A stretch of DNA of 64,000 nt from positions 62,001 through 126,000 of the IMG/VR virus record IMGVR_UViG_3300033153_007973. One strand, 5' to 3'. A program made the translations under genes and the position numbers. Positions 8,495-58,272 of the stretch are shown one piece after another; position 1 is the stretch's first letter, and the number at the start of each line of letters is the position of its first letter. The notes under the pieces were generated by a model that saw only the letters and a list, made by a program, of their open reading frames with translations, was not told the DNA's origin and searched no databases.

Positions 8495-8499
8495 CAGAT

Positions 8500-27709: not shown

Positions 27710-29005
27710 ATGAAAGACCTTCTAAAAGCATACAGCGATCCCAAAGTTCTAGAGGTAGCGGATGCAGTTCGTTCGATCCTCTATACTGATGGGGCAATGA
27801 TCACCGAGAATGATGAGACAAAAACGCCAGAACTTTCGAGCCTGCAACTGAAAGACCTTCTGACAAGTGCGGATATTATCCCATTACTGCCGGAAGCGAT
27901 CACTCACGTGATCCTGGAGGAAATCGAACCCGCCTCCATCATATACAACACGTTCTTCAATGAAGTGCGTGCAATCAGAAGTGGCACATTCGTGATCCAC
28001 TCAATCGGACCGATGGTTGCTCTTCCCGTCGGCGCCAATGGCGAATACCCTGAAACAAGCTTCGCCCTGGACGCAACGGGTCATCGGATCAACATCAACA
28101 CCCAGAAGTATGGCCTTGAGATCAACATCGCGGACGAAGTCCTCGAAGACAATCTCATCGGCGTGGTGGGGATGTGGCTCCGCAGAGCTGCTAACGCTCT
28201 GGTTCGGAACAGAGAAAAGATGGCTATTGATATGATCAAGAAATACGGGATCATAATGATGGACAACAATTCTCCTTCCGCTCCTGTGAAAAACCTCTCT
28301 GGACGTGACATCACTGGTACCCAAAATGGTACCATGACGATGAACGACCTGATGGAACTCTACACGAGTGCCCTGATGGAAGGTTTCACTCTGGATACAA
28401 TGATCATGCACCCCCTTGCATGGCAGACTTTCATGACGGATGCAGAGATGAAGGAAATCGTCCTGAATAACAACACCCTGGTGACCTATCGGCCACCTCG
28501 GGGTTCCTATTCAAGGGCACTCCAGCAACTTGCACATCCTGAGAATCTTGGATTGACATGGAACAAGGGCTACGGTAATCCAACTCTTGATCCTACAACC
28601 AACAAGCTCGGAAAGAACCCATACGCATCGACTCTGTCGGTGATGAATGCAACTTTCAATCTTCCACCTCGGAGTGTTCTCCCAACTCCGCTCCAGATTA
28701 TCGTATCTCCTTATGCTCCAATCAGTACGGTTAATAACCGCACGATCACAGACATTATCTTCGCCGAATCTAGCGAAGTAGGTCTGGCGCTGCGTAAGAC
28801 AGATCCGATTACGGAACGGTTTGAGAATCCTGAAAAGGAAAGAGTGAAGATTCGAATGAAAGAAACATTCGGAATGGGAATTCTGAACCAGGGGAAAGCC
28901 ATCAGAATCGCAAAGAACGTTGTGGTCGACAGAAATTACGTGTTCGATAATGTGAACAGCGTGACGAATATGGCCAACCTCAACCGTTACTCCGATCTGG
29001 TGTAA
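27710..29005 (+). CDS. major capsid protein (HK97 fold)
   Basis: VGANGEYPE, KYGLEINIADEVLED, MIMHPLAW, IRMKETFGMGILN. Confidence 0.92.
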   Translation: MKDLLKAYSDPKVLEVADAVRSILYTDGAMITENDETKTPELSSLQLKDLLTSADIIPLLPEAITHVILEEIEPASIIYNTFFNEVRAIRSGTFVIHSIGPMVALPVGANGEYPETSFALDATGHRININTQKYGLEINIADEVLEDNLIGVVGMWLRRAANALVRNREKMAIDMIKKYGIIMMDNNSPSAPVKNLSGRDITGTQNGTMTMNDLMELYTSALMEGFTLDTMIMHPLAWQTFMTDAEMKEIVLNNNTLVTYRPPRGSYSRALQQLAHPENLGLTWNKGYGNPTLDPTTNKLGKNPYASTLSVMNATFNLPPRSVLPTPLQIIVSPYAPISTVNNRTITDIIFAESSEVGLALRKTDPITERFENPEKERVKIRMKETFGMGILNQGKAIRIAKNVVVDRNYVFDNVNSVTNMANLNRYSDLV

Positions 29006-42828: not shown

Positions 42829-43749
42829 ATGATAGACAAACAGAAACTAGACAAGTGGAGACGCAGATACGGCATAATCTCCGCATTGTCCACTAAGAAC
42901 GGGGATGAATATGTCCTCCGCGGTCTTCAGTTTGAGGAGATGCATAGATGGTCTTCCTTTATTACCGTATCTAAAGGTACTTCAGATACGTATGATATTG
43001 ATGATCAGATTATCGAAGATGTCCTTTCTGCATGTATCCTTCATCCTGAAGAACCAAACATATCTCTAATCATGGAAAAAGCAGGGCTTGTTGTCGAAAT
43101 GTGTAACCGCATTATGAGTGTAACACAATTCGAGAACATGGACTTTCTGATTAATTGTTATATAGATAAACTTAGATCAGCCAATATGGTATATGGAGTC
43201 ATCCGTATGCGATTGGTTGCTCTCTACGGAGTAGCAGTTCTAGAAAAGCTCAGAGATCTAAAGGCAGAAGAAATTATCGAGCTTTTAGTATATGGTGAAT
43301 ACTCCACAGAGAGTATCGGACAGTTCTCTGAGATTATTAACAAGCCAGAGATCCTTCCTAGAGATAGAAAGGGCAAGATCATAGAGAAAGAGATGATGAA
43401 TCTTCTCTTTGGAAAGGACAAACCAAACACTCCTGCACAGAACAAAAGGGAGAAGACACCACATAAACCAAAGACAATCGATGATCTTCAATCGATGATG
43501 GATAAATCACAACAAGCAAATAGAGGACCATCTGAAGAAGAGCTTCAAACAATGGATAGTAAGACACATGCACAGATGAAGAAAGACGGAAAGATACCAG
43601 ATTTCCAACAAGAAGTTAAGGGATCAATGAATGATGCAACATCAGCACTTCAGAAGAAGATTGAAGAAGATAAAGCCAAGTTTGGCACAGGTGCTGCGGA
43701 CAGAACGGGTGGATTTAGAGGAAACATACAGGATCTAATTAATAAATAA
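42829..43749 (+). CDS. putative tail assembly chaperone paralog with C-terminal extension
   Basis: N-terminal ~105 aa resemble the preceding ORF. Confidence 0.6.
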   Translation: MIDKQKLDKWRRRYGIISALSTKNGDEYVLRGLQFEEMHRWSSFITVSKGTSDTYDIDDQIIEDVLSACILHPEEPNISLIMEKAGLVVEMCNRIMSVTQFENMDFLINCYIDKLRSANMVYGVIRMRLVALYGVAVLEKLRDLKAEEIIELLVYGEYSTESIGQFSEIINKPEILPRDRKGKIIEKEMMNLLFGKDKPNTPAQNKREKTPHKPKTIDDLQSMMDKSQQANRGPSEEELQTMDSKTHAQMKKDGKIPDFQQEVKGSMNDATSALQKKIEEDKAKFGTGAADRTGGFRGNIQDLINK

Positions 43750-46700
43750 TGCTTACTCGAACAAGAGACCGAGAAAACCGTGAGCGACTTGGAGAATTTT
43801 CCAAAAAGTCGCGCGGTAGTCCTATTCGCTCTATCCTAAAGATGGGCGCGACCATGCTGGGCTGGGGCATTGGTCTTAAGGTATTCAGAGGAATGTCATT
43901 CAAGGCTAATCTTGGCCTTGGAAAGATATTAGCCAGCACTGTCCGTAAGGGTTCACTGACAAATGCATTCGTCTCTAAAGTTTCTGAGGTAGCAAAAGCT
44001 GGAATAAGAGCTGGTAAGTACACGCCTGGTCAAATATCAACAATGAAGAAAGGCCGCGGCTGGTATAGGAAACTCCAGACAACAGTAAAGACTTCTCTAG
44101 ATACAATGGCTACTCGACATCTCTCTCTGCATGATGCAATAAAGACAGAGGGACTCGCTAAAAGACAGTACTTTGTTAAGAGTAGTCTCGAGAAGACGAC
44201 TAATAGACTTGGAGGAATGCATCAAAGATATGCACAAGCAAAGATCAATGCGAATATTCCAGAACTATTAGATGATCTAAGTCTAAAAGATATTCGCTTT
44301 ACTTCCATTGTTAGAAATACAAAGAAGTTCAGTGGTTCTGGTCTTGGAAGAAAGATAAATGAGATGAGATCCACAAAACTGCTAGAGCCTGGCGGAGATC
44401 TCTATGCTCGAGCAAGGAAGAACAGTGGTGCCACATTGGGAGGACCGAACTTTGGGAAGGCAATGGCGGCACGCATGTATAGATATGGCACAGACTTTAT
44501 GTCATATGCTCCGCTATTCTATGCTTCACATAGATTGACTGCAGTTGATGATAAGAAATGGTACCAGCCTTCTGCAATAGCGGACTGGACTAAATGGGCA
44601 GTCGGTACAGATATTGTATTCCGCGGTGCTATGCCTGCTGCATCAATTGGTCTTCGTAAGCTGGGAAGAGGAGCAGCAAATATTCTTGAGAATACAATCA
44701 GCCCCACAATGGCTCAGAAAGGTGCCAAGTTCCTTGAGTCGATATCAAAGAGCGCACCAATTAGAGCAGCAGATCTTGCTAGAGACTATACTAAAGCAGA
44801 AATTGGCAAGGTAGGCGTTAAAGATGTTCCTAGATATACAAAGACATTCTTCCAACAGTATAGACGATTCCGCGGAATGATTACTAAAGATCCTAACCTT
44901 CATCTGCGGAAGGGCACTGATCATCTAGAGGAAGCAATGTCAATGCTTTCCAAAATAAATACCAGAATCAAAGGATCGATGCCAAAACACGAGGCACTTG
45001 CTCAATTCAAGAAGGAAACTATAGAACCACCAAGCAGGGCAATGTCATTCTTTAATAAGATGATAAGAGGAGGAGGACTGTCAAGTGCATCACGCACAAT
45101 AAAACCAACCGATGTTGGTAATGCATTCAACAAACAAGTTACTGTTAATGCAGGTAGAGGAATGATTTCCTTACAGGGACAAGAGTTTGATGTCTCTAAT
45201 ATACTGCCAAAAAGACTCATGCAAGAAGCAGGGAGGATGCTTGGGAAAGTCAGTATAGCTGGAGTTCGTCCTGGCACATGGTTTGGACTAAAGGGCGCAT
45301 TCAGAAAGAGGCGTCCTTTCGCACAGTTACTGGAAAAGGATCAGCACCTTGGAATTGGGATAGGCGATCATGACGGATTTAGTGGGAGTGCAATTTTACA
45401 GAAGTTTGGTGAACAAGGTGATCGATTAGAACTAGAAAACCAAATAAAATATGCATCCGTGGGAGGAAAGGGGCAAGTCGCAACACTAATTGATAAAGGT
45501 GACAAGACATCAGAAGGATGGGCAAAAACAAATACAAAGAAACTCTATCAGTCCATGATTGCTGCACGAAAGGAAGAATTAACTCCGACCGGTATGGAAA
45601 AGTATAAAGCAGCTCTCGCTAGAGGACATAATATTCAGAGAGAAGGTGAGTCGTTCTTTCTTATGGGAGACAAATCATATTACTCAGTTTCCTCTGGAGT
45701 CGGCACCAAAAAAGCACCGGTAGTATTCCAAACGGGTTATGATGTAAATGCAGGACAATTTCATAGATGGGATCTATATGCTAAAGGACAGGGAGGAACA
45801 TTATCAGATGTCGCAATGGACCATTTTGGTCGAGCTGGTACTGTAGAAGTCGATGGTAAACCCATATATGGATCATCTGGTCCTAGATTACATAGTAGAA
45901 TGCATCCCGACAAGAGTCCAATTGCGAACATGGCAGCTAAGTTCTTGGATAAATTTGAAGTTGGGTCAAAAGAAGAACGAGCAGTATTAGGTAAGATTAC
46001 TGATCTTGGGTTAGGAAGATACATAGACTCAGCCAATACCAAAGTCTTTCTCAGTGATGAATTCCTCTTTCATCCTGAATTCGCAAAGACAACCCTGGCA
46101 CAAGATGATGGTTCAGCTGCAAAACTTATCAGAAGACTAGATGCTCAATCACACCGAATGGAAAAGGTCCAAGCTCAACGTGTTCTCAAGGGTGAACGAT
46201 TAATTACAGCAATTCGTGGAGATATGCAAGGTAATGCAGCCGGTAAGAAAATAGAAAGTACAATAATAAATAGACTAACAGATGATTTCTCTGTTGTAAA
46301 ACAGAAAGCAAAAGCAAGAATGACATTCAATAAAGCAAACAAAATTCAATTAAGACCAGAAATGGAAGAGATCATAGAAGAGATCGCAAGCGGGAATGCT
46401 ACGAGCTTTAGGAAACTACAATCTTCAGTTCATCCTAAATTACGAATGAATAAGCTTGATGCATATAATAACTCTGCATACCGAACATGGTTTAAGTCAG
46501 AAGATTTTGGTGTCCTAGATAGAGAAATGGCAAGTCTCATGGACAGAGGGATTATAACTAGAAACGATAAAGCATTCAGAGCATTAGAGGCAACACGAAT
46601 AATAAGTGAATTCGATAATTTTGATGTACATAATGAACTAATAAATGCAGAATTGGGCAAGTTAGGTGACTATAATCATAACACAATCAATAGAGTCATC

Positions 46701-49700
46701 GGTCGTTTCCAGACTGATAAGGCTTCAGTATTAGATATAGATAGATCAATAGAACCATTATGGTCACCCTGGGGAAGAAATAGCAGAGTAAAAAGCAGTG
46801 GTGGTGATTTCCCGAGATCTGGTCTTCTTATGTCAAAGAATAAAGATGAACATGGTGACATAATGATGTCAATAAAGGAAGAACTATTTCCTAATTCTAA
46901 TGCAATGGAAGGACAGATCCAACCTATTACAATGAAGGGTGCGCAATCTTTGATGATAACCAATGCGATCAACAATGTCGGAAACATTGTTGGTATGGGA
47001 TTTAATAAGAATACAGCATCATCTACTAAATCATTTATGCAAGCAACGCTCTTCAAAAGAATATTGCCAGCTGCTGCAATTGCATCAGCGTGGCAAACTG
47101 CCGATATGGTTGCAGATGAAAGCAATCTCTTTGAGGGTACAAGTCTTGGCGAAGGTCTGAATGTATTTGTAGGAGAACAGATTGCGAAGACGCGACTTAG
47201 TATTGCGAGAATCAATGATATAACTGGAGTAACTGATAGTGCAAAGTATCTAGAAGATTTAATGCCGGGAGCAGTTAATAGCGGATTCAGTGGTGCATTA
47301 AGAGGATTTGGTATTCCAATGCTGGGAAGTGCACTTGGAATGGCTAAAGGTGGTCCCAAAGGTGGGATGATTGGTGGTGCAATTGGTGGCCTAGTCAGTC
47401 TCTTTACTGCAGGTGGACCACTAGCAACGATACAACAATTTGACATTACTAAATCCAGACGAGAATTATTAGAACAATATGCAGGTAGAGCTGAGGTGCC
47501 AATATATAAAGGTCAAGGTTGGTTATTTGGAGGAGGCTCAGTCGGTGGTATAAGACTTGATAGATATCAACCAAACTGGTTTCATAGATTAAGTTCACAG
47601 TATAGACATAGCGATGTTCTTTATGGTGACAAGTTCGAGAGAATGCGAGCATCTCTAGACCCATTTCATTACTACGAGAAACACAAATACTCACGCCCAT
47701 ATCCAGTCAAAGAGATAGCCGGCGTAAATATGCCTCTCGTTGGTAATGTAATTGGACTTGGTGGACAAATGGCTTCTGAAGAGGATCTGAAATATGGAAA
47801 TCTAGCATCATCTGTAGATAGTAATACATCATATCAATCAATTCCATTTGGTGGACAACCAAGTATATATAGTAATGAAAGACCATGGGGTGGATCCATG
47901 ATGAATGGCATAGGACTTCCAGCCGGATCCGCTCAACCAGATGCTCCTCGAGCTATTAAACCAACATCATTCCCTGCTAGAGTAAATGCAGCATTCAGAA
48001 TGTCCACAGAGTTCGCTGGTCTTCGTGGATTTATGACACAGGAAATGATCACCAATGCAAATGGCGGGATGTATCCATACGAACAGAATCCTATTCTAGC
48101 ATCAGCTAGTAGCATGACCTCTCCAAGTCGAATGTTCTGGGAACAGGAATGGGGAGACATGTTAGCTATGTCAGAAATGATCAGACGTTTTGTTCCTAAA
48201 AAGGGACAACACACAAACGAATGGAATCAGATGCCAAACATAATGCCTAAGTGGATGCCTGGTGATGATGGATTTATTAATTTTCAGGCGGGAGATCCCT
48301 ACTGCGTCAGTGCTGACACTCCAATAAATACTTCAACTGGGTATACATTGGCAGCTGATATCTGCGAAGGAGATAAGATCTATACACATAATGGAAGCTG
48401 GTTACCAGTCAAGAAGAAAGTAAGAAGAAAGATCAGGAAAGAAGAGAAGAGTTACAGTTTGAAAGTTTCTGGAGTGTGTGGAGTCGATCTTGAGTTCTCA
48501 GAAGAGCACCCATTGCTGGTAAAGAGAACATCAAAGTGTACGTTCTCGAATTCTTCTATCTGCAGACCGTTGCGAAATCTGATCAAGCCTCTCCCAGATC
48601 TTAAAGGATTCTGTGACAAGGTCAATTCCAAGAAATATAAGAAAGGGTCAGCAGGAACTCCAAAGAGAGGATGTAGTAACTCATGGGAGAATTCAGAAGC
48701 TTCCTTCGTTCCAATTAAAGATTGTAAGCCAGGAGATTATCTTGTCTACAAAATTCCAGCATCTGGCAACGATGAATCAACAATTGTTTCATATAAGCAG
48801 CTCGTTAATAGGTATCGATCACAATATGTAGATGTTGATAGAGTCCTCCACCTAGACGGAGGAATGTGCTGGGTGATCGGGCTGTACCTAGCAGAGGGAT
48901 CCACAGCAAAGGGTAAGAATGTTCCTCATCGGCTCATCTTCTCTATGTCTGATGATGAAGTTGAAGTTCTTAAACATGTCAAGATGCTTCTGTTGCAGGA
49001 ATTCAGTGACGTTCTGAGAGAAGAGTCGTGCCATATCAAGATTCGAGATAAGTCGGCAGAGCTTGTAATCACATCATACATTCTAGCGCAGATATTCAAT
49101 AATTTAGCTCCTGGTAACCTGTATCAGAAACGGATACCTCAAGTATTGTTTGATACAGACAACGATTGTCGCTTAGCATTATTATTTGGAATGATTCTCG
49201 GTGATGGATACATCTCATCCAAAGGCACAAGAATCGGATACTCTACAGCTAATGGTGATCTCGCACATGACTTTAGACGGCTGGCATTCTCACTAGGCAT
49301 CCCTGCATCATATGAGGCTAGGGAGAGAGTTGATGGAAGAACCGGCCGAAGAAACAACGCATATGAATGCAATTTCCATTCGATCAATGTATATGGAATG
49401 AATCTGGCTGACCTACATTACAAATCCGAGTTTGTTAGTTGGGGTTATAGTAGACTTCCCCACGTGGATAACTTCTCAGATGGCGAATACATATATCAAC
49501 GTATAGCACAAATCGATGAGATCGAACTCGAGTATGTGTACGGATTCGAAGTCGACGATGATGATAGTTTCTGTGTCATGGACTTTGCAACTCATAATAC
49601 AAAAATCACAAGAGGAGAGGCTCGTCTACCAGGAGCAGGTTATACATCTATGAAAGATGTTGCATTTAATTTCCCATTTGAAGCTGAATATCTTGGATTC

Positions 49701-51461
49701 AGTCAGAATGATGCTATCGGAATGTTAACTGGCCAAAAACTTCCAACAAGTCCAGATGATAGATATGACAAAATCCTTAGTGGAAAGATGGCACAGCGAA
49801 TAGCACAGAACATGTCAGCAACTAATATAAATATTAAGACTAATGAACAGGTATTTCATCCAGAGATGAACCTGTCTGGAAAAGCAGACTTAGTTGTTAA
49901 TGGTAATATCATGAAGATCAAAGCTGTCTCTAATAGAACATTCAGCAATCTAACCTCTCCTAATCCACAGCACACTTCAGAACTGAATGCACTTCTTAAT
50001 ATTTCACAGAGTAATGTCGGCTCACTCATGTATGTAAATGCTGAAACTGGAGACACAACTTCATTCAATGTATCTTCAGATCCGAATCGATTTAAACGTG
50101 ATGTAGAAACTTTAGAATCTGCAAAAGCAGTCTCTGAACATCTTATGACAAAGTATGGACCATCTATTGGTGTAGATATGGGACAAGCATATAGCAGAAT
50201 AGATCGTCTACGGATTCTGGGAGATGTCGCACCATACTCTAAGCAATTCAAAGATACACTCAAACAAGTTAAGACACTAGCACAAGTTGATAGATTAAGT
50301 CCTAGAGAACTACAAATTCTAGACGAAACTCTAGCAAGGGTTGATGAAAAGAGGGATAGATTCATATTTACAGAGAAGAGATTCAATCGCGGCAACCCAG
50401 TCACTAGTGAGGAACGACAGTATCAAGAGGGTATAAAATTGCAGTACAGTCCTTTGGAAAGAGCAGTTGGAAGCGGATGGGAAGCATTCACCCACCTCAA
50501 AAGTCCACTCCATACTAAGTTCTTAAATACATATGATCCTATCGAACAATATGAGAGAAATGAAGTCTATGGAAAACCAATTAGAATGTGGGGACAACCA
50601 TATCAGGATTTTGTCCGTCCGTATGCTACCTCTATGACGAATATCGATAGACCTATTCAAGGTGCGTTATCATTTGGAACTGGTGGCCTTATTTTTGGTG
50701 GACCGATAGGTGGTGCCATAGGTGCAGGGATAGGAACGATCTGGGGTGCATCAAATGGCGTTCGAGAAGTACCTGGATATAAACAGAAGGAACGAAGACT
50801 CATTGATACACTAGATAAAGTCCAATATGAGAAGGCCAGACGAGCATATGAACTAGATGGTGATACAGAGCAACTCAAGAAGATGAAGAATACAATGACA
50901 TGGGCATACTCAAATGCAACCACAGCAAACCAGCTTATTGCTGCCACTCCGAGACCAGAGAGAGCATTCATGGAAAGATTCATGAGAGCAGGAACGGAAG
51001 AAGAGCGAGAAAGGATTATGAGTGTTGTTCCAGATTATGTAAAACCTGTATTATCAAATGCCTGGATGGGTGGCTCTGTTGATAAGATTAAAGGAACAAA
51101 ACTCGAACGAATGCCTACCCCAGGTGAGGATTGGTCTGGATGGAAGAACGAGTTTAGAACAGAAGACATTGCAGTAAAGATGTTTAATAGAGCAGGACTC
51201 GATGCACATGATGTAGGACTTGGGTGGCAAAGTCAGATCAGGAAAATGAGCGCAACCCCCAATATTCCAGAATCATTCACAGAGGCTGTTGCTGGTGTTC
51301 CTGAAACACAATATGAACAAGTAATTAGAAGAGTAATTCCTGGAGCGACAGTCTCTGCATCAACATCAGGTGCAGGTGGCGTTAGTGTCAATCTGAGAGT
51401 AGAAGTTATAAATGAAGCAGCAATGGCAAAGAACACAGGGGTAAGAAATGCGCTATCCTAA
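43749..51461 (+). CDS. tape-measure-like protein with intein and degenerate PD-(D/E)xK domain
   Basis: 2570 aa after chaperones; glycine zippers GGPxGGxIGxxIG; internal intein. Confidence 0.75.
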   Translation: MLTRTRDRENRERLGEFSKKSRGSPIRSILKMGATMLGWGIGLKVFRGMSFKANLGLGKILASTVRKGSLTNAFVSKVSEVAKAGIRAGKYTPGQISTMKKGRGWYRKLQTTVKTSLDTMATRHLSLHDAIKTEGLAKRQYFVKSSLEKTTNRLGGMHQRYAQAKINANIPELLDDLSLKDIRFTSIVRNTKKFSGSGLGRKINEMRSTKLLEPGGDLYARARKNSGATLGGPNFGKAMAARMYRYGTDFMSYAPLFYASHRLTAVDDKKWYQPSAIADWTKWAVGTDIVFRGAMPAASIGLRKLGRGAANILENTISPTMAQKGAKFLESISKSAPIRAADLARDYTKAEIGKVGVKDVPRYTKTFFQQYRRFRGMITKDPNLHLRKGTDHLEEAMSMLSKINTRIKGSMPKHEALAQFKKETIEPPSRAMSFFNKMIRGGGLSSASRTIKPTDVGNAFNKQVTVNAGRGMISLQGQEFDVSNILPKRLMQEAGRMLGKVSIAGVRPGTWFGLKGAFRKRRPFAQLLEKDQHLGIGIGDHDGFSGSAILQKFGEQGDRLELENQIKYASVGGKGQVATLIDKGDKTSEGWAKTNTKKLYQSMIAARKEELTPTGMEKYKAALARGHNIQREGESFFLMGDKSYYSVSSGVGTKKAPVVFQTGYDVNAGQFHRWDLYAKGQGGTLSDVAMDHFGRAGTVEVDGKPIYGSSGPRLHSRMHPDKSPIANMAAKFLDKFEVGSKEERAVLGKITDLGLGRYIDSANTKVFLSDEFLFHPEFAKTTLAQDDGSAAKLIRRLDAQSHRMEKVQAQRVLKGERLITAIRGDMQGNAAGKKIESTIINRLTDDFSVVKQKAKARMTFNKANKIQLRPEMEEIIEEIASGNATSFRKLQSSVHPKLRMNKLDAYNNSAYRTWFKSEDFGVLDREMASLMDRGIITRNDKAFRALEATRIISEFDNFDVHNELINAELGKLGDYNHNTINRVIGRFQTDKASVLDIDRSIEPLWSPWGRNSRVKSSGGDFPRSGLLMSKNKDEHGDIMMSIKEELFPNSNAMEGQIQPITMKGAQSLMITNAINNVGNIVGMGFNKNTASSTKSFMQATLFKRILPAAAIASAWQTADMVADESNLFEGTSLGEGLNVFVGEQIAKTRLSIARINDITGVTDSAKYLEDLMPGAVNSGFSGALRGFGIPMLGSALGMAKGGPKGGMIGGAIGGLVSLFTAGGPLATIQQFDITKSRRELLEQYAGRAEVPIYKGQGWLFGGGSVGGIRLDRYQPNWFHRLSSQYRHSDVLYGDKFERMRASLDPFHYYEKHKYSRPYPVKEIAGVNMPLVGNVIGLGGQMASEEDLKYGNLASSVDSNTSYQSIPFGGQPSIYSNERPWGGSMMNGIGLPAGSAQPDAPRAIKPTSFPARVNAAFRMSTEFAGLRGFMTQEMITNANGGMYPYEQNPILASASSMTSPSRMFWEQEWGDMLAMSEMIRRFVPKKGQHTNEWNQMPNIMPKWMPGDDGFINFQAGDPYCVSADTPINTSTGYTLAADICEGDKIYTHNGSWLPVKKKVRRKIRKEEKSYSLKVSGVCGVDLEFSEEHPLLVKRTSKCTFSNSSICRPLRNLIKPLPDLKGFCDKVNSKKYKKGSAGTPKRGCSNSWENSEASFVPIKDCKPGDYLVYKIPASGNDESTIVSYKQLVNRYRSQYVDVDRVLHLDGGMCWVIGLYLAEGSTAKGKNVPHRLIFSMSDDEVEVLKHVKMLLLQEFSDVLREESCHIKIRDKSAELVITSYILAQIFNNLAPGNLYQKRIPQVLFDTDNDCRLALLFGMILGDGYISSKGTRIGYSTANGDLAHDFRRLAFSLGIPASYEARERVDGRTGRRNNAYECNFHSINVYGMNLADLHYKSEFVSWGYSRLPHVDNFSDGEYIYQRIAQIDEIELEYVYGFEVDDDDSFCVMDFATHNTKITRGEARLPGAGYTSMKDVAFNFPFEAEYLGFSQNDAIGMLTGQKLPTSPDDRYDKILSGKMAQRIAQNMSATNINIKTNEQVFHPEMNLSGKADLVVNGNIMKIKAVSNRTFSNLTSPNPQHTSELNALLNISQSNVGSLMYVNAETGDTTSFNVSSDPNRFKRDVETLESAKAVSEHLMTKYGPSIGVDMGQAYSRIDRLRILGDVAPYSKQFKDTLKQVKTLAQVDRLSPRELQILDETLARVDEKRDRFIFTEKRFNRGNPVTSEERQYQEGIKLQYSPLERAVGSGWEAFTHLKSPLHTKFLNTYDPIEQYERNEVYGKPIRMWGQPYQDFVRPYATSMTNIDRPIQGALSFGTGGLIFGGPIGGAIGAGIGTIWGASNGVREVPGYKQKERRLIDTLDKVQYEKARRAYELDGDTEQLKKMKNTMTWAYSNATTANQLIAATPRPERAFMERFMRAGTEEERERIMSVVPDYVKPVLSNAWMGGSVDKIKGTKLERMPTPGEDWSGWKNEFRTEDIAVKMFNRAGLDAHDVGLGWQSQIRKMSATPNIPESFTEAVAGVPETQYEQVIRRVIPGATVSASTSGAGGVSVNLRVEVINEAAMAKNTGVRNALS
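48303..49598 (+). mobile_element. intein with LAGLIDADG homing endonuclease (432 aa)
   Basis: Y/CVSADT start, SEEHPLL, IGLYLAEGS, LFGMILGDG, VYGFEV..SF..THN/T end. Confidence 0.95.
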
Positions 51462-54400
51462 TAGAATACATGCTGGCGATCATGATAATGATAGTATATT
51501 TAGTCCGATCGCTCCTCTTCTAGCAATTGGTGCTGTCAGTGCGATTGGTATGTCTGTAGCTATGATTAATCGCAATAGCATGCTTCGCTCAAAGTATTCT
51601 AGAATAGCCGCGGGGATGGATAGATATCCAACACAAGCCCTACCAAGAGTGGATAACAGTAGTGCATTCAGTGTTCTTCGTAGCGAAGCGGCCATGAATG
51701 AACTGAAAGCCATGAAGAAGCAGCGCTTAATTGATGTAGCTAGAATGGCTATTCAAAAAGAAGAAGAGGTGATCGCTAACGAGGTTAGTGATGCTCTCGG
51801 CGATCTAATGAATATCCGCTACAATCTATCTAATATAGAACTTAGAAGGGCATGGGGATCAGGCCATCCATTCGAACTAGCAGGCACTATCGCCGACACA
51901 CTCGATGAAGCCATATTAGGAATTAGTACAGGAAAACCAGATTCAATTCGAGATGCAATAACTCGCTTAAAAACAGATATAGCAACAATACAAACGCGGC
52001 CGAATACATCAGTTGAGATCAGGGCAGGAGATCTACAACAAGTTCTTGAAAGACTTCAGGGAGCTGAGAAACTATACACTGAAGATCTTCCAAAATTAGT
52101 AAACGCAGTGCAACCATTCGCTCCTGGTGCAGTTACCGCAGAAACAGCAGCAACTATCTTGGGCGGCTCACCAGCTACTTTAGCGAAAAGACTAAATGAA
52201 GAACAAATTCCCGGTGGAAAGAAAGGAAGAGTTAATCGGGAACGAATGGAACAAATAAAGATACTGACTGGATTCAAGACAGAGAAGATCAATAATAGAT
52301 TAGTTACCACACATGGACGAGTAAACTGGGTGCGAAAACTAAGGGGAATCAGTCCAACAACTGGGGCAATCATGCCCGCTGGTTCCACAATTAAAGTCAT
52401 ATATCCTCAAATTGGAGTTACTGGTAATATCGAAGATCTTGATAGAGTAGTTCAGGCTGCTGGAAAAGAATTCAGGACTCATCCATTACTGAAAGAAGCA
52501 CACAAGACACATCTCAGAATGGCTAAAAATGCAAAGGGAAATGTTAAGTTACTATTATCATCTCCAGATATGAAAACGTCACTTAAGAGATTTACAGATG
52601 GAGTAGTGGAACATCTTGGAGTAAACCCTAGAGATATTACTTTTACTCAAGAAGGAGCCAATGTTGTTTCCCTTGTTAAGTTCACTGACGCACCACCGAT
52701 GCGATTTGTCTTCCCATATGAAGAAGCAGGTCTATCAGCATCATATGGACATAATGTAATCTCAGCTTCCAAGAAATCTTTCACACATATGGGCAAAGGT
52801 GAAAAGAAGATACTGTCATCCAGCATCACTAATGGTTTTATTGATAGAATGGTTGGAAAAGGCACCGGTTCCAATGGTGTGTTCCAGAAGATGGCTACTG
52901 CAGGTGATATAAAGAATGGAGCATTCAAGGACGCAACATCAAGAGTTCTTTTCCAACGAAAAGTTAAAGGAATATTCTCTGGTGGTGGTAAAATGATGAC
53001 AGACGTAACAAATGCTTCCCCAGAGGCAATATCAAATGCAGTAACAACTTTTGAAGAGCTTCCAGGAACAGACAAAATTAGTGTATTACAAATAATGAAA
53101 CATGAAGAGGAAACTAAACTCAGTACTATTATATCTAATCCAACTGGTAATAGATTTGTAGGTCAGAAAACTGCGGTCCTCGATAAGATAAATAGTCTTC
53201 AACGACAAATCAATAAACTCCAAAAAGGATATAGTGCAGACAAAGCACTTACCGATCTTGAGCGAACCCACACTGGAAAACTCAAAGTTGCAGAAGTGAT
53301 TAACTATAATAATAATAATATCATTATTAGTGAATTAAGTAAAGACGGATTTATACCTACAACTTCTGTCGTAACGCCAGAACGAGCACTAAAGAATAAA
53401 GCGTGGGGATTGGAAGACATTAGAGAAAGATACAGTGATCCTGGATTGCAATGGATCAAAGGATCTAAATCTATAAATAATATGTATGTTTCTTCTGATG
53501 TATCAATATTTAGTCCCAGTAGCAGTGATTGGGGCAGAAGAATATCAAATTTAAAGAAGAGATCAAAACACAGACTAAAATTAACCATCGGTAAGAAAGA
53601 GGTTAATTTTAGTGGTGTTAGAATGATTAGTAGAGCAGAACAGGTTAAACGAGCAGCACTTGCAGGAGATTATAGCACAGCTCGTGGATCATATGGACAA
53701 GTTAATGTATTATTTGTTGACTCCATAGGAGGAGATGCTGGAGAACTCAGAATCACAGATGAAGTCGGTGACATGTTAGCTGGCTCAAGAGATAGAAAGG
53801 TTTCACTTAATTCTGCAGACATTAGACGGCCATTTAGTGGCATTGATCAGCAAATGACTAAAGCATTAAAGAAAGTATCTAAAGAGAATGGATTAATTGA
53901 TCTAACTGCTCCAGAGAATTGGCACGTTAGAAAGAAGCTTAATGTATTTCTTCCAAAGATAAAAGATCAAATCAAAACTCCTTACGAGGATATAAAGCTA
54001 ACTGCAATAACACATAAAGCAACGGGCAGTTATGAATTTCATTATACTGCGAATATGACAGCTGCGACGAAATCAAAGATTCTGCTTGGTGCGAACAATG
54101 AAAGATTACAAGTACATTCTACATTATCCAAAGATAGAATGTTTGAAATGCTTGCTGCTGAAATGGACTGGGATTTATCAGATGCTAATAGCTCTAAGAC
54201 TCAGTTCCTCAGAGACATAGGAGCAACAGTGGGTGCAAAAGCACCACTCAGTCTCTTCAAGAAGGGAATTGCAACACCAGGAGCAGCAGCCGGATTAGGA
54301 ATGAGCATAACAAATGCGCTAGTTTTTAGAACACTCTATAGAGTTCAAAAGATTCTGGCAGATCGTGGTCTTAGAACCATGGATGATAAACAAGCAACAA

Positions 54401-57400
54401 AGATCGTACAAGGTCTTTTGAAGATAATTGACAATCAAGGAGAACTTGGGCGAAATGTCAAATTTTCAGTTGATGATCTTCTTGGTGGAGCAACACTATT
54501 AACACACATGGGTAATAAAAGCACTAGTGATACAGCAACTCTTATAGGTAGGACTCTCAATATTAATACTATCAAAGATCCTGACACTTATAAAAAGATG
54601 ACTAAAGGTCTGGCAAAAGTGATCGAACAATTTGGACATGAGAATAAGTCGAAGAGTGCAAACACAGCAAGTGAGATTATGGATTCTATTGTAAAATTTA
54701 GAGATGGAGAGATCAGAATATTTGGTCTCTCACAGATGTATCATACTGCACCAGACATTGATGAAACTTTCAAGATGAGCTCTGGAAAGTTTGGGCCCGC
54801 GGGAGTTGGTGGTGATCCAGCTGGGACAATAACATCAATGACAGAAGTAATAGCAGCAAAATTGAGCGGGTTCAATTCACTTGCAGACAAAGCACAATTA
54901 CAAATGGCAATGGGAATGGAATACACAAAAGATTACTTTGCCATATATGCAGGTCTTCTTGAGCCTTCATTAATGGAAGAACGTCTGGCTCAGTTTGGAA
55001 CTGATAGATTCAAAAGTAAGAATCCTGGAAAACAAGAAGTACTAACTATAGATAAGCTCATGAGTATGGCAAAGAGAGATAAAGATGGAAAGAAGAACAG
55101 ATTCTTCGATCTGTTCAAAACCAGATACGGAGTCAATACAGAAGCATTTCAGGAAGCAGTTGGTGAAGGTGGTATTCTATTCGGGAAACAGAAGATTGAG
55201 ATGGCAGAAGCCATGAGTAATATACAAAGACTCGTAAATGAAAACATGAAGGAAGTGGATCTCGAAAAGTTCTCTGGTAATGTAAAGAAACAAATACAAG
55301 AGATCATGTCACTGTCTCCGCTTATTTCGTCAAAACAAGCACAATTATATCACGAAATAACTCGAGATTATAAGTTCCTTGAACTAAGTAAGAAACACCC
55401 ACTGAAAATACTGGGAGTTAATAGATCAATGTCAAGAGTTCCTATGGTTGGATTCTTTGATATTCCTACACGTGATATTCCAGATAACCTTATGGATGTC
55501 TTTGCAAATAGAGATCTATATGCTATAAACCAAAAGATTATAGAAGGTACAAATGTAGATATTGGAAAACAAGTCATAGGGAAAACAGGCGCAAAGATAG
55601 GAAAGGATATTTCAAAGAGTTCAAAGGTGCTTGTTCAAAATGCTCCACATCGCGCATTGTTAAATCTTATGACTGCGGTATCTGTGGGTGCAGATGAAGA
55701 AGTCATCGGAACATTCGCAGATAGATACACAACAGCCATACAACAATACTCACAGGCAGTAGGAAGAACTACAATTAGTCCTAGAGTTGGTGGGTCTTTA
55801 CAGACACGGCCATTACAATCTGAGGGAAAATTTAACCTCGCTATTATGAATACCAAAGCAGCAAAATATAGTCTTATGAATGCTGAGAAAGTAAAGAATA
55901 TGCCTGGTGCACTTTCTGGTACTCGGATATGGCAACCAGATCTAGGTGAGATTTGGATGGATAAGAGCACTTTTATTAATGTAATGAAGAGTGAGATGAG
56001 CGGTGATCATAGATCAATGAACAAGGCAACACAGATGGCTGATGAAATCATGGCCGAATCTAGAATATTTACGAGATTCTATAATAGAAAACCAACACTA
56101 GGACAAGACATAAGAGCACTCCGTGTCAGACTTTTTGATGCTGAGATGCTTACAGATCAAAGATTTGCTGGAAAGGTTGCATCAGGTGAGATAGCAAGAT
56201 TAAAGAAATCAATGATCCTTTCCGTGATTGATCAAAATCTTGCATCAGGTGACTTTGATGGTGATACTGGTGCAATGGTCATGGCTATGTTCAAAGGTAA
56301 GATGTCTGATAATGCAGATGTACTAGCGGATTGGGTAGTTGGTAATAGTTTCAGATATCAGACAAGCGATGGAAATATCAAAGTATTCGAGAATAGTGGC
56401 AGAACTGGTAGAGCATATATGGAGACATTCCAAGAAGTAATAGAAACATCTGCTCATAAATCAGACAATAAAAGATTATCTAATCAATTATCAAAGACAA
56501 CAGTAACAATTGAACAACAGATAGAACACGTTGCAGGAATGGTTCCAGATTCTGCAGAACGCGGACAGTTCTATACAAAAGTAAGAGATCTAGCAAAAAA
56601 GCAATATGGAGATGATCTATCACAGGCTGTAACATTTCGCACTGGAATAGGAGATATCAGATTTTGGAATAACTCAACAAGCATTCCTAGAAATCTTATA
56701 CGCGCTAAAAGAGCAGCAGAAGCAAAGATGACAGAACGAGCAACGGGCATCAATACTGCAGATATTATCGAAGAAGGAATTGAAGCAACTGAACAATTCC
56801 TTGGTGATCACGGTATGGTCTATGACCATAAAGGCATAGCACAAGAACTAAAAGCTACACATGCTGGGACAGGTGGAGGGAAAATAGCACATGCAGCATT
56901 AGCAAACATGAAAGATCAAATAGATTATTATGGTCCTTCACGGCTCATGTTAAAAGCCGGAACAGGACCCGTATATAACTTTATGCACAACCATTTATGG
57001 AACGCAGCAATTAATACCTTTGGTATTACTTCTCAACAATCAAAGGATCTTGTTAAGTGGGGAAGAGTTCCACAGCAAGCAAATATCTCTATGAAACATA
57101 TGCTTCCTGGAATTGCCGGCGATGCTGTTAATAATCTAAAGACATTCTGGACTGCTATACCAGGAAGTTCAGCACACAGAAACTCTGGATTGAAACTAAA
57201 GACAGGCAACTATGATTTTACACTTACAAAGTTTTGGGGAAATCAAGTAAAGAGAACACAACAGATAGCTAAGAAGCTTGGTGATGATAGTCTTGATGAT
57301 ATGCTAGAGAAGGTCACATCATTTGGTACAAATCCCATCGTCAAAGATGATGGAGTAATCAATCTAGGTGACTTTATACGACTTCAGGATCGAAGACTTA

Positions 57401-58272
57401 AATATATGGAACGAGGTCTTCTCGCTAAAGTATCAGATGAAGGAATAGCTGCAACACAAAAGAGTAAGTCTGTATCTGAAAAGCTCATGAACGAGTTAGC
57501 TACAGAAGATCGAGTATATAATGAGATAGAGGAATCTGGAGCTTTCTTCAGAAGTGTTGCTGGTAGTGAATCCGCAACATCTCATATCATGAATAAGAAG
57601 ATCTTTGAAGGTGGTAATCAGAGAATACATAGATCTTTTCGTGCATTATTTAGTGGAGAAAACATTGGAAAACATGTCGATGATGATATATTAAGAGGAA
57701 CACTGGGGCAAGTAGCACAGAAAATAGCACCAGCAAAGATAAAGCCGCTATTCACTCGTCCTAATGTTGCTAAATATGCAGCAGATTCAATCTCTCGAAA
57801 AGCAGCTAGACTGATTGAAGGTACTTCTCTACGGAAACATATAGATACTAAAGGAATGAAAGCCGCGGGAATGGGAATGACTTTGCTCGGCACTGCTGCA
57901 GTTGGTTTCTTGGCATTTGCTGCTGCATCCCCTGGCGGACAACCTTGGCTAGGACCAAAACCTGGATATGGTGGAGAATACAACGAACGCAGACGTCGCA
58001 AAGATGAAGAGCACATGGAGAATATCACCACCACTGGAAGATCCAAGCTCAAATTTCTAGATGGGAACTCATATCCAGATTACACACCATCCAAAACTGC
58101 TAGAATCTATATAGATCCACAGAAGAAGAGATATGCAACTGTATCACAAACCTTACGTTCTGTCCAAAATCTTGGTAATGCAGGAATCATGGACTTTAAT
58201 AAGCGACAGATGGTATCTGGTGGAACAACAATCAATAATATGTCAAGGCCGAATGGATATGGAGGATTCTAA
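51448..58272 (+). CDS. putative single-chain two-barrel (virion) RNA polymerase
   Basis: PRVGGS, NRKPTL (aa 1546), GDFDGD (DFDGD aa 1602-1606) in beta-prime order; beta-like GQVNVLF..DAGELRITDE upstream. Confidence 0.75.
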   Translation: MRYPNRIHAGDHDNDSIFSPIAPLLAIGAVSAIGMSVAMINRNSMLRSKYSRIAAGMDRYPTQALPRVDNSSAFSVLRSEAAMNELKAMKKQRLIDVARMAIQKEEEVIANEVSDALGDLMNIRYNLSNIELRRAWGSGHPFELAGTIADTLDEAILGISTGKPDSIRDAITRLKTDIATIQTRPNTSVEIRAGDLQQVLERLQGAEKLYTEDLPKLVNAVQPFAPGAVTAETAATILGGSPATLAKRLNEEQIPGGKKGRVNRERMEQIKILTGFKTEKINNRLVTTHGRVNWVRKLRGISPTTGAIMPAGSTIKVIYPQIGVTGNIEDLDRVVQAAGKEFRTHPLLKEAHKTHLRMAKNAKGNVKLLLSSPDMKTSLKRFTDGVVEHLGVNPRDITFTQEGANVVSLVKFTDAPPMRFVFPYEEAGLSASYGHNVISASKKSFTHMGKGEKKILSSSITNGFIDRMVGKGTGSNGVFQKMATAGDIKNGAFKDATSRVLFQRKVKGIFSGGGKMMTDVTNASPEAISNAVTTFEELPGTDKISVLQIMKHEEETKLSTIISNPTGNRFVGQKTAVLDKINSLQRQINKLQKGYSADKALTDLERTHTGKLKVAEVINYNNNNIIISELSKDGFIPTTSVVTPERALKNKAWGLEDIRERYSDPGLQWIKGSKSINNMYVSSDVSIFSPSSSDWGRRISNLKKRSKHRLKLTIGKKEVNFSGVRMISRAEQVKRAALAGDYSTARGSYGQVNVLFVDSIGGDAGELRITDEVGDMLAGSRDRKVSLNSADIRRPFSGIDQQMTKALKKVSKENGLIDLTAPENWHVRKKLNVFLPKIKDQIKTPYEDIKLTAITHKATGSYEFHYTANMTAATKSKILLGANNERLQVHSTLSKDRMFEMLAAEMDWDLSDANSSKTQFLRDIGATVGAKAPLSLFKKGIATPGAAAGLGMSITNALVFRTLYRVQKILADRGLRTMDDKQATKIVQGLLKIIDNQGELGRNVKFSVDDLLGGATLLTHMGNKSTSDTATLIGRTLNINTIKDPDTYKKMTKGLAKVIEQFGHENKSKSANTASEIMDSIVKFRDGEIRIFGLSQMYHTAPDIDETFKMSSGKFGPAGVGGDPAGTITSMTEVIAAKLSGFNSLADKAQLQMAMGMEYTKDYFAIYAGLLEPSLMEERLAQFGTDRFKSKNPGKQEVLTIDKLMSMAKRDKDGKKNRFFDLFKTRYGVNTEAFQEAVGEGGILFGKQKIEMAEAMSNIQRLVNENMKEVDLEKFSGNVKKQIQEIMSLSPLISSKQAQLYHEITRDYKFLELSKKHPLKILGVNRSMSRVPMVGFFDIPTRDIPDNLMDVFANRDLYAINQKIIEGTNVDIGKQVIGKTGAKIGKDISKSSKVLVQNAPHRALLNLMTAVSVGADEEVIGTFADRYTTAIQQYSQAVGRTTISPRVGGSLQTRPLQSEGKFNLAIMNTKAAKYSLMNAEKVKNMPGALSGTRIWQPDLGEIWMDKSTFINVMKSEMSGDHRSMNKATQMADEIMAESRIFTRFYNRKPTLGQDIRALRVRLFDAEMLTDQRFAGKVASGEIARLKKSMILSVIDQNLASGDFDGDTGAMVMAMFKGKMSDNADVLADWVVGNSFRYQTSDGNIKVFENSGRTGRAYMETFQEVIETSAHKSDNKRLSNQLSKTTVTIEQQIEHVAGMVPDSAERGQFYTKVRDLAKKQYGDDLSQAVTFRTGIGDIRFWNNSTSIPRNLIRAKRAAEAKMTERATGINTADIIEEGIEATEQFLGDHGMVYDHKGIAQELKATHAGTGGGKIAHAALANMKDQIDYYGPSRLMLKAGTGPVYNFMHNHLWNAAINTFGITSQQSKDLVKWGRVPQQANISMKHMLPGIAGDAVNNLKTFWTAIPGSSAHRNSGLKLKTGNYDFTLTKFWGNQVKRTQQIAKKLGDDSLDDMLEKVTSFGTNPIVKDDGVINLGDFIRLQDRRLKYMERGLLAKVSDEGIAATQKSKSVSEKLMNELATEDRVYNEIEESGAFFRSVAGSESATSHIMNKKIFEGGNQRIHRSFRALFSGENIGKHVDDDILRGTLGQVAQKIAPAKIKPLFTRPNVAKYAADSISRKAARLIEGTSLRKHIDTKGMKAAGMGMTLLGTAAVGFLAFAAASPGGQPWLGPKPGYGGEYNERRRRKDEEHMENITTTGRSKLKFLDGNSYPDYTPSKTARIYIDPQKKRYATVSQTLRSVQNLGNAGIMDFNKRQMVSGGTTINNMSRPNGYGGF

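What the first reader, a model, noticed from the sequence alone, without database searches (positions are those of the whole stretch)
48303..49598. Full intein in a tape-measure-like protein, with a Cys-rich insert
Seen: a 432-aa Cys1...His-Asn/Thr intein with both LAGLIDADG blocks, splitting GDPY/TKITRGEARLPG; a roughly 55-aa four-Cys insert (CTF..IC..FC..GC) follows block B. Established: inteins mostly target conserved motifs of nucleotide-handling enzymes. Inference: the GDPYTK segment is a critical conserved site, and splicing could be metal- or redox-gated.
Basis: partly seen in the sequence, partly recalled or inferred. Interest (0 to 1): 0.6.

Follow-up and report, generated by a model that had tools for sequence, protein, structure and literature searches.

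The report
Mobile intein in jumbo-phage tail protein
A giant tail-region virion protein of an uncultivated 234-kb phage carries a complete self-splicing, self-spreading intein, and the intein's cysteine-rich insert is most likely a small zinc-binding DNA-recognition add-on for its homing nuclease, not a switch that gates splicing.

Summary
Window 48303-49598 (+) encodes a 432-aa class-1 intein with Cys1, an SxxH block B, two LAGLIDADG motifs, His-Asn at its end and Thr+1. It sits in a 2570-aa ORF (43749-51461).

- **Fold:** the AlphaFold model has pLDDT 90 and matches solved homing-endonuclease inteins (TliVMA, PI-SceI, PI-PkoII).
- **Host protein:** it is the homologue of Bacillus phage 0305phi8-36 gp145, a virion protein of unknown function. 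In that phage the next gene, gp146, was assigned as the tape measure. gp145 reads GDPY-IKVKKGESRLPG uninterrupted.
- **Insertion site:** it lies in the most conserved motif of the family. I found 43 metagenomic homologues with an intein at exactly this site and 22 without.
- **Mobility:** the intein tree and the host-protein tree conflict strongly (AU p = 0.0007), which indicates horizontal spread.
- **Cys-rich insert:** the 55-aa insert is real and marks a 19-member intein clade. Every member keeps at least 4 Cys in it. Sibling inteins at the same site carry either nothing or a winged-helix DNA-binding domain at that same point.

I therefore read the insert as a zinc-knuckle accessory DNA-recognition module, analogous to the PI-SceI DNA recognition region (DRR). 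Metal or redox gating of splicing has no support, but it is not excluded.

The parts
43749..48302 (+). N-extein (1518 aa) of a giant tail-module virion protein, homologue of 0305phi8-36 gp145. It ends with the conserved motif ...MPKWMPGDDGFINFQAGDPY.
   Evidence: ORF; translation; collinear BLASTP with gp145; tblastn hits to gp145 and related phage structural proteins; conservation of the last 160 aa, invariant R121, R122, N135, N139 and D158 of the segment.
48171..48197 (+). SEMIRRFVP motif. This is 'site b', an independent intein insertion point in at least 9 homologues. It is empty here.
48303..49598 (+). Intein, 432 aa, class 1 (Cys1 ... His-Asn / Thr+1), with a nested double-motif LAGLIDADG homing endonuclease.
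48498..48509 (+). Block B, SEEH (Ser66 and His69 invariant in 43 same-site inteins).
48537..48701 (+). Cys-rich basic insert in the HINT domain (intein residues 79-133; Cys79, 87, 104, 124). Proposed Zn(Cys)4 accessory DNA-recognition module.
   Evidence: Low model confidence, pLDDT 49-67. No Pfam family. A wHTH sits at the same position in sibling inteins.
48870..48899 (+). LAGLIDADG motif 1 (WVIGLYLAEG; G193 and G199 invariant, catalytic Glu198 nearly invariant).
49173..49208 (+). LAGLIDADG motif 2 (LALLFGMILGDG; G300, catalytic Asp301 and G302 conserved in at least 90%).
49533..49598 (+). Blocks F and G (YVYGFEVDDDDSFCVMDFATHN). A429, T430, H431 and N432 are invariant.
49599..51461 (+). C-extein (620 aa plus stop). 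It begins T+1-KITRGEARLPGAGY and carries the other family motifs and a glycine-zipper segment.
49761..50168 (+). Degenerate Cas4/RecB-like PD-(D/E)xK module. It is optional in the family. Here ExK reads KIK and the QxxxY motif reads E..L, so it is probably not a nuclease.
   Evidence: PHROG 1706 at 6.5e-5; family profile against Cas4 4ic1 at 4.5e-7; alignment; Foldseek on a homologue model.
50190..50240 (+). YSRIDRLRILGDVAPYS motif. This is 'site c', occupied by an intein in homologue P0065. It is empty here.

Best explanation
The region is a canonical, probably still active, mobile class-1 intein. It sits in the gene for a giant, cysteine-free virion protein of the tail module (0305phi8-36 gp145 family) of a 234-kb phage.

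Shown:
- The intein boundaries, all splicing residues and both endonuclease motifs.
- The HINT plus LAGLIDADG fold.
- A clean insertion relative to intein-less homologues.
- Occupancy of the same site in 43 homologues.
- Conflict between the intein tree and the host-protein tree.

Inferred mechanism: after translation the intein excises itself, through an N-S acyl shift at Cys1, attack by Thr+1 and cyclisation of Asn432. This rejoins GDPY to TKITRGE and restores the most conserved motif of the protein before tail assembly. Separately, in co-infections its LAGLIDADG enzyme cuts intein-less alleles at the GDPY/xK...RLPG coding sequence and is copied in by repair.

The 55-aa insert is most likely a small basic Zn(Cys)4 knuckle that adds DNA contacts for the endonuclease. 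That would make it an accessory domain inserted into the HINT domain, like the DNA recognition region (DRR) of PI-SceI. In sibling inteins the same position is empty or holds a winged-helix domain.

My probabilities: true intein about 0.97; still splicing-competent about 0.85; insert binds a metal through four Cys about 0.6; insert serves DNA recognition about 0.5.
For: - **Boundaries and motifs:**
- **Family scans:** Pfam LAGLIDADG_3 at 8.8e-12 and Hom_end above cut-off. A profile of the 43 inteins hits PI-PkoII at 6.6e-19, TliVMA at 9e-15, PI-PfuI at 4e-9 and PI-SceI at 4e-7.
- **Fold:** AF2 model pLDDT 90.3, pTM 0.90. Foldseek gives TliVMA intein 6.9e-18 and PI-SceI 3.9e-17.
- **Clean insertion:** intein-less gp145 reads GDPY-IKVKKGESRLPG. 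21 more intein-less alleles were found.
- **Conserved catalytic residues:** across 43 same-site inteins of 356-538 aa, C1, S66, H69, G193, G199, A429, T430, H431 and N432 are invariant, and E198 and D301 nearly so.
- **Mobility:** the Cys-insert inteins form one clade with support 100. Their hosts are scattered on the C-extein tree, and several have an intein-less sister (P0004/P0061 98, P0007/P0048 100, P0006/P0054 100). P0002's sister P0008 carries a wHTH-type intein. At least 11 gains or losses of the intein are needed on that tree. The AU test rejects host monophyly, dlnL 1548, p = 0.0007.
- **Insert:** at least 4 Cys in all 19 clade members. Two columns are invariant and the other two ligands alternate, including a classic CxxxC...CxxC form. 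Charge is 13 K/R against 4 D/E.
- **Same position, DNA-binding domain:** wHTH Pfam hits fall at the same intein position in P0041 (HTH_24, 4.6e-7) and P0008 (HTH_45, 1.6e-4).
Against: - No experiment exists: splicing, cleavage and metal binding are all unobserved.
- The insert is modelled with low confidence (pLDDT 49-67) and matches no curated zinc-binding family.
- This phage's version lacks one Cys of the commonest five-Cys consensus and has long spacings (C-x7-C-x16-C-x19-C), which is not a textbook knuckle.
- The equivalence of the insert position with the PI-SceI DRR rests on my recollection of the PI-SceI sequence plus a general statement in PMC8966425. No residue-level structural alignment was made here.
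- Intein GC content equals that of the host gene, so this copy is not a recent arrival, and its endonuclease could be inactive despite intact motifs.
- The tally of 43 occupied to 22 empty sites is biased, because the first search query included the intein.
Confidence: 0.6

Rival explanations
1. The four-Cys insert is a metal or redox sensor, so splicing, and with it maturation of the virion protein, is conditional.
For: Four conserved Cys lie in a loop of the splicing (HINT) domain only 9 residues after block B. The host protein itself has no Cys, so all thiol chemistry of the precursor sits in the intein. Zinc- and redox-conditional splicing exists in other inteins (PMC7360933).
Against: In the case read here, zinc acts at the catalytic centre: it binds the catalytic nucleophile of DnaBi1. 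Here +1 is Thr and no extein Cys is available for a trap. The same loop holds a winged-helix DNA-binding domain or nothing in sibling inteins that splice at the same site, which points to a DNA-related role that splicing does not need. Cys4 sites with swapped ligand positions are typical of structural zinc sites (general knowledge).
Confidence: 0.08
2. The insert is a structural or neutral elaboration of a HINT loop, either a zinc-stapled or a disordered basic loop. It plays no part in DNA recognition or regulation and is simply inherited within one intein clade.
For: Low model confidence. No family match. Length and sequence between the Cys vary widely, and this phage has an extra lysine-rich stretch shared with only 3 relatives. 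Several sibling inteins do without any insert.
Against: At least four Cys are retained in all 19 members despite 39-50% overall identity, with compensating ligand switches, which argues for selection. The net charge of +9 and the wHTH alternative at the same site argue for nucleic-acid contact.
Confidence: 0.25
3. The element is a decaying intein. It still splices, but its endonuclease is dead, and it persists only because precise loss is rare.
For: Composition is fully ameliorated to the host gene. No near-identical copies were found in the viral collection.
Against: Both catalytic acidic residues and a conserved Lys276 are kept across 43 alleles. On the host tree, Cys-type inteins sit next to intein-less sisters on short branches, e.g. 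0.11 and 0.15 for P0004 and P0061, which suggests ongoing gain or loss.
Confidence: 0.07

Closest known systems
PI-SceI (Saccharomyces VMA1 intein; PDB 1VDE, 1LWS)
   Same: Class-1 intein with a nested double-motif LAGLIDADG endonuclease. [quoted passage not shown] The block F/G style is similar (..YG....DD....F......HN). Foldseek E = 3.9e-17. Profile E = 4e-7.
   Different: The PI-SceI DRR is a larger, cysteine-independent fold, while here the module is a 55-aa four-Cys basic segment. The host is a phage virion protein, not an ATPase. The +1 residue is Thr, not Cys. Sequence identity is about 14%.
Archaeal endonuclease inteins TliVMA (7QSS/7QSU), PI-PkoII (2CW7), PI-PfuI (1DQ3)
   Same: These are the best structural and profile matches. 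They have a modular HINT plus endonuclease plus accessory-domain architecture. Accessory domains differ between inteins at one insertion site (PMC8966425), as seen here (none / Cys4 / wHTH).
   Different: Their accessory domains lie between the endonuclease and the C-terminal HINT part, not after block B. None is a Cys4 module, according to that paper's descriptions.
Bacillus phage 0305phi8-36 gp145 (virion structural protein, found in virions by mass spectrometry)
   Same: Collinear homology with both exteins. The gene neighbourhood is the same: sheath, tube, tube paralogue..., gp145, then a giant downstream gene. It has the same GDPY/..GE.RLPG motif and is likewise cysteine-free.
   Different: gp145 has no intein. 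Its Cas4-like module keeps a D-x-K (DIK) at the ExK position, whereas this phage has KIK. Identity is only 20-39% in the conserved blocks.
Inteins in actinobacteriophage structural proteins (portal, minor capsid, tape measure; bioRxiv 10.1101/2025.01.02.630785)
   Same: They set a precedent that phage virion and tail proteins, not only nucleotide enzymes, host inteins.
   Different: The host protein family is different (InterPro IPR013491 tape measure there, no such match here) and so is the phage group. No relation between the inteins themselves was tested.
Zinc/redox-conditional inteins (mycobacterial DnaBi1; redox-trap inteins from memory)
   Same: Cysteine chemistry within an intein could in principle respond to zinc or oxidation.
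   Different: In DnaBi1 the sensing residue is the catalytic cysteine at the splice centre. Here the Cys cluster is in a dispensable loop, the +1 residue is Thr, and the exteins have no Cys.

Membership tests
Class-1 intein (HINT splicing domain) | N-terminal nucleophile (Cys or Ser at position 1) | tested here: met
   Cys1 at 48303-48305; invariant in 43 same-site inteins.
Class-1 intein (HINT splicing domain) | Block B TxxH | tested here: met
   SEEH at 48498-48509. Ser replaces Thr in all 43 alleles; His69 is invariant.
Class-1 intein (HINT splicing domain) | C-terminal His-Asn followed by a Ser/Thr/Cys nucleophile | tested here: met
   H431-N432 then Thr (49599-49601). The +1 residue is T in 42 and S in 1 of the 43 alleles.
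Class-1 intein (HINT splicing domain) | Flanks are contiguous in intein-less homologues | tested here: met
   gp145 and 21 metagenomic homologues read GDP(Y/F)-x-K...GE.RLPG without interruption.
Class-1 intein (HINT splicing domain) | HINT fold | tested here: met
   AF2 pLDDT 90.3. Full-length matches to solved inteins. Pfam Hint_2 alone is below its cut-off, 24.4 against 28.4 bits.
Class-1 intein (HINT splicing domain) | Protein splicing actually occurs | not testable with these tools
   Needs expression or virion mass spectrometry.
LAGLIDADG homing endonuclease (monomeric, two motifs) | Two LAGLIDADG helices, each ending in a catalytic acidic residue | tested here: met
   ...LAEG (Glu198) and ...LGDG (Asp301), each kept in at least 90% of the alleles.
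LAGLIDADG homing endonuclease (monomeric, two motifs) | Family profile above the curated threshold, and matching fold | tested here: met
   LAGLIDADG_3 at 45.6 bits against 22.5. Foldseek matches I-DmoI at about 1e-7.
LAGLIDADG homing endonuclease (monomeric, two motifs) | Site-specific cleavage of the empty allele (homing) | not testable with these tools
   Only indirect evidence: conflict between intein and host trees, AU p = 0.0007.
Phage tape measure protein | Match to a tape-measure family profile | tested here: not met
   No Pfam or PHROG hit for either extein at the thresholds used.
Phage tape measure protein | Gene position directly after the tail chaperone pair; length scales with tail length | tested here: inconclusive
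   The gene lies in the tail module after the sheath and tube genes. In 0305phi8-36 the homologue gp145 sits between the chaperones and gp146, and gp146 was assigned as the tape measure. The downstream 2274-aa ORF has no database match. The tail length of this phage is unknown.
Cys4 zinc knuckle / ribbon | Four conserved metal-ligand cysteines | tested here: met
   At least 4 Cys in the insert of all 19 clade members. Two columns are invariant, the others alternate, and a sub-clade has CxxxC...CxxC.
Cys4 zinc knuckle / ribbon | Match to a curated zinc-binding family, or a confident compact fold | tested here: not met
   No Pfam hit at E up to 10 for the window's insert. The best hit in a relative is Mcm10 Zn motif at E = 0.067. 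pLDDT is 49-67.
Cys4 zinc knuckle / ribbon | Metal binding | not testable with these tools
   Needs metal analysis of purified protein.
Cas4/RecB-like PD-(D/E)xK nuclease (C-extein module) | Fold and profile similarity | tested here: met
   Family profile against Cas4 4ic1 at 4.5e-7 and 4r5q at 6.6e-5. PHROG 1706 at 6.5e-5 for this protein. Foldseek on the homologue model: 4ic1 at 9.7e-6, lambda exonuclease at 2e-5.
Cas4/RecB-like PD-(D/E)xK nuclease (C-extein module) | Catalytic D...ExK and QxxxY residues | tested here: not met
   This phage has D...KIK and E..NAL where active-looking relatives have D...EIK and Q.N.Y.
Conditional (zinc/redox) splicing inteins | Sensing through a catalytic Cys or a Cys partner at the splice junction | tested here: not met
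   The +1 residue is Thr and the exteins hold 0 Cys. A partner Cys inside the intein cannot be excluded without coordinates.

The most novel reading that the evidence does not exclude
The Cys4 module makes excision of the intein depend on zinc availability or thiol redox state. Maturation of an otherwise cysteine-free giant tail protein, and therefore virion assembly, would then be checked post-translationally against the physiological state of the infected cell. A milder novel reading is compatible with the evidence: three independent intein insertion sites flag the RRF.P / GDPY..GE.RLPG / ILADVAPYS core as an unrecognised functional centre of a protein that is probably ejected into the host.
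Probability: 0.08. Interest if true: 0.75.

Novelty: new variant of a known kind. Interest (0 to 1): 0.45.

Why it matters
Inteins are usually discussed as parasites of replication and repair enzymes. Here a whole family of giant, cysteine-free jumbo-phage virion proteins turns out to be an intein hot spot. It has three insertion sites, and dozens of alleles at one of them. That gives a natural series of inteins at a single site carrying no accessory module, a Cys4 module or a winged-helix module at the same HINT loop.

That series is a ready-made test of the idea that homing-endonuclease inteins survive by acquiring and swapping DNA-recognition modules (PMC8966425). It could also supply compact new specificity modules for engineered meganucleases.

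The inteins also act as pointers. They mark the RRF.P / GDPY..GE.RLPG / ILADVAPYS core as the functionally critical part of a protein family that has no annotation at all.

Tried and rejected
- **The search for related loci with the intein in viral contigs:** 8 pattern hits, none confirmed. No close DNA-level relatives were retrieved that way.
- **The protein-atlas search on the C-extein:** no usable hit.
- **Pfam on the isolated insert and on three relatives' inserts:** nothing significant.
- **Pfam and PHROG on both exteins and on the neighbouring giant ORFs:** no tape-measure or other family. The only exception is the weak Cas4-like PHROG hit.
- **tblastn of the downstream 2274-aa ORF against phage records:** no match. 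Its equivalence to gp146 rests on gene position only.
- **Profile of the N-extein flank against PDB:** nothing.
- **Considered and rejected: a BIL/pretoxin-HINT autoprocessing domain rather than an intein.** Rejected because His-Asn/Thr, the nested LAGLIDADG enzyme and contiguous intein-less alleles are all present.
- **Considered and rejected: the intein targets a nuclease active site.** Rejected because about half of the family lacks the Cas4-like module yet keeps the insertion motif, and many of those members still carry the intein.
- **The large representative search** was not run. The word search had already answered the questions that depended on relatives.
- **No spliced (joined-extein) sequence was built for any search or fold.** Exteins were searched separately by reference, and a natural intein-less homologue (P0039) was folded instead. 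In one search extein halves were concatenated in memory only, to count cysteines; nothing was saved or searched.
Full report
**1. What is in the sequence**

The window is part of a 234,008-bp viral record with direct terminal repeats, rated complete. Around the finding lies a myovirus-type structural module:
- large terminase, 18654-20444
- portal, 22782-24452
- major head protein, 27710-29005
- tail sheath, 32452-34893

The finding lies inside a single 2570-aa ORF, 43749-51461 on the + strand.

Window 48303-49598 translates to 432 residues that start with Cys and end with His-Asn, and the next residue is Thr. Checked by translation, the intein motifs are:
- block B SEEH at 48498-48509
- LAGLIDADG motif 1 at 48870-48899
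- LAGLIDADG motif 2 at 49173-49208
- blocks F and G at 49533-49598

Pfam finds LAGLIDADG_3 (45.6 bits, cut-off 22.5) and Hom_end above threshold. Hint_2 falls just below its threshold.

An AlphaFold model built on 43 related inteins has mean pLDDT 90.3 and pTM 0.90. It matches solved endonuclease-bearing inteins over their full length: TliVMA 6.9e-18, PI-SceI 3.9e-17, PI-PkoII and PI-PfuI. A profile of the 43 inteins hits the same proteins by sequence.

**2. The host protein is not shown to be a tape measure**

Both exteins are collinear with gp145 of Bacillus phage 0305phi8-36. gp145 is a 1930-aa protein found in virions by mass spectrometry and annotated only as a virion structural protein. 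In that phage gp145 lies between the two tail chaperone genes and gp146, and the authors assigned the tape-measure role to gp146 (PMC2147016).

Neither extein, nor the downstream 2274-aa ORF, matches any tape-measure family. I therefore call the host a giant tail-module virion protein of the gp145 family, function unknown.

The family is almost free of cysteine. This protein's 2138 extein residues contain none, and twelve intein-free homologues of about 2100 aa contain none or one.

**3. The insertion site**

gp145 reads GDPY-IKVKKGESRLPG without interruption.

A word search with the region around the intein returned 56 large metagenomic proteins. Of these, 43, counting this phage's own protein, carry an intein at exactly the same point: GD(P/A/S)(Y/F) | C ... 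ATHN | T-K...GE.RLPG. Their intein lengths run from 356 to 538 aa. A second search with an intein-less member added 16 more alleles that are empty at this site.

The site lies in the best-conserved stretch of the family. On the N side, two Arg, two Asn and the Asp of GDPY are invariant. On the C side, G+6, R+9, P+11 and G+12 are invariant.

The +1 residue is Thr in 42 of 43 occupied alleles. In empty alleles it is A, T, S, N, G, R, I, V or E, so the Thr is associated with intein occupancy rather than conserved by the host.

Two further insertion points exist in the two neighbouring conserved motifs:
- 'Site b' lies before (S/T)E..RRF.P and is occupied in at least nine proteins.
- 'Site c' lies inside ILADV|APYS and is occupied in one protein (P0065).

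What the segment does remains unknown.

**4. The neighbouring nuclease-like module**

A profile of the first 300 C-extein residues hits Cas4 structures (4ic1 4.5e-7, 4r5q 6.6e-5). A model of the intein-less homologue P0039 matches Cas4 and lambda exonuclease by fold.

This roughly 165-aa module is absent from about half of the family. It sits as an insertion between GE.RLPG.GY and DR.RILADVAPYS.

In many members the D...ExK and Q...Y residues are intact. In this phage and its nearest relative P0008 they read D...KIK and E...L. So the intein does not sit in a nucleotide-enzyme active site, and this copy of the module is probably inactive.

**5. Is the intein alive?**

All splicing residues and both endonuclease acidic residues are invariant or nearly so across the 43 alleles. 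These alleles are only 23-50% identical to the window's intein.

The intein tree places the 19 Cys-insert inteins in one clade with support 100. On a tree of the C-exteins their hosts are scattered:
- This protein's sister, P0008, carries a different, winged-helix type of intein (support 97).
- P0004, P0006 and P0007 each have an intein-less sister (support 98-100).

At least 11 gains or losses of the intein are needed on the host tree. An AU test rejects a single host clade for the Cys-type inteins (dlnL 1548, p = 0.0007). I had defined that group from the insert alignment before building the host tree.

This is the pattern expected of homing. GC content of the intein equals that of the gene, so this particular copy is not a recent arrival.

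**6. The Cys-rich insert**

Compared with insert-less siblings, the insert spans intein residues 79-133 (window 48537-48701), directly after the block B strand. It has four Cys, at positions 79, 87, 104 and 124. It has 13 Lys/Arg against 4 Asp/Glu.

All 19 members of the clade keep at least four Cys in the insert. Two columns are invariant. The other two ligands switch position between sub-clades, one of which shows a classic CxxxC...CxxC arrangement. Ligand switching with a constant count of four suggests a structural Zn(Cys)4 site. This is inference: no curated family matches, and the model is unconfident here (pLDDT 49-67).

At the same alignment position, eight sibling inteins carry an insert of about 90 aa. 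In P0041 and P0008 that insert is recognised as a winged helix-turn-helix (HTH_24 4.6e-7, HTH_45 1.6e-4). Others have nothing there.

Published structures show that accessory domains of endonuclease inteins differ between inteins at one site and modulate DNA recognition. [quoted passage not shown] From memory, the PI-SceI region also follows block B. I could not verify this residue by residue here.

The most economical reading is that the insert is a compact, basic, zinc-stabilised DNA-contact module for the homing enzyme.

**7. The gating hypothesis**

In the conditional intein I read about, zinc binds the catalytic nucleophile itself (PMC7360933).

Here +1 is Thr, the exteins have no Cys, and the Cys cluster is in a loop that sibling inteins lack or fill with a DNA-binding domain. 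I rate gating at about 0.08. It is testable with a simple reporter.

**8. Novelty and verdict**

This is a real, canonical class-1 LAGLIDADG intein. Inteins in phage structural proteins have precedent.

Three things are new as far as my searches reach:
- the host family, with at least three insertion sites
- the abundance of alleles at one site
- a Cys4 module, alternating with a winged helix, in the HINT loop

I rate it a new variant of a known kind, of moderate interest.

**9. Limits**

- The ratio of occupied to empty sites is biased by the query design.

Noticed in passing
Homologues P0026, P0037, P0040, P0047, P0048, P0051, P0054, P0062, P0063 (site b) and P0065:1663-2071 (site c). The corresponding empty motifs are at window 48171-48197 and 50190-50240.: The gp145 family carries inteins at two more sites, both in conserved motifs: before (S/T)E..RRF.P, and inside ILADV|APYS. 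Three proteins (P0037, P0040, P0047) have inteins at both sites a and b. The site-c intein ends ...FCILGAATHN|C, which resembles the site-a inteins, so it may derive from them by a jump to a new site.
   Followed up: partly
window 43749-48302 and 49599-51461, and homologues: The exteins contain no cysteine in 2138 residues. Twelve intein-free homologues of about 2100 aa have 0-1 Cys. This extreme depletion in a giant virion protein would fit a protein that must stay unfolded or be threaded through the tail.
   Followed up: partly
window 49761-50168: A Cas4/lambda-exonuclease-like PD-(D/E)xK module is embedded in the virion protein. It looks catalytically intact in many homologues, degenerate here, and is absent in about half of the family. 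Homologue P0017 additionally has a staphylococcal-nuclease domain (Pfam SNase, 1.2e-5). Nuclease cargo on a possibly ejected tail protein is worth a look.
   Followed up: partly
G000:C1:194593-195648 (- strand; locus L005, outside the window): The same phage genome holds a second intein (Pfam Intein_splicing, 44 bits), in an 1185-aa protein with a helicase C-terminal domain. No LAGLIDADG hit was found there.
   Followed up: partly
window 3314-8657 (+): An array of 20 tRNA genes (Gly x2, Asp, Ile, Glu, His, Ser x2, Tyr, Leu x4, Lys x2, Ala, Gln, Phe, Val, Met) lies upstream of the structural module.
   Followed up: no
window 51448-58272 and 58484-64000 (+): Two more giant ORFs (2274 aa, and more than 1839 aa running off the window) follow the intein-bearing gene. 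The first has no match in phage records, Pfam or PHROGs. By position it corresponds to 0305phi8-36 gp146, the assigned tape measure.
   Followed up: partly
G000:C1:23016-23162 (locus L004, outside the window): A weak LAGLIDADG_3 match (16.6 bits, below cut-off) falls in a 166-aa open frame. It may be a free-standing or degenerate homing endonuclease.
   Followed up: no
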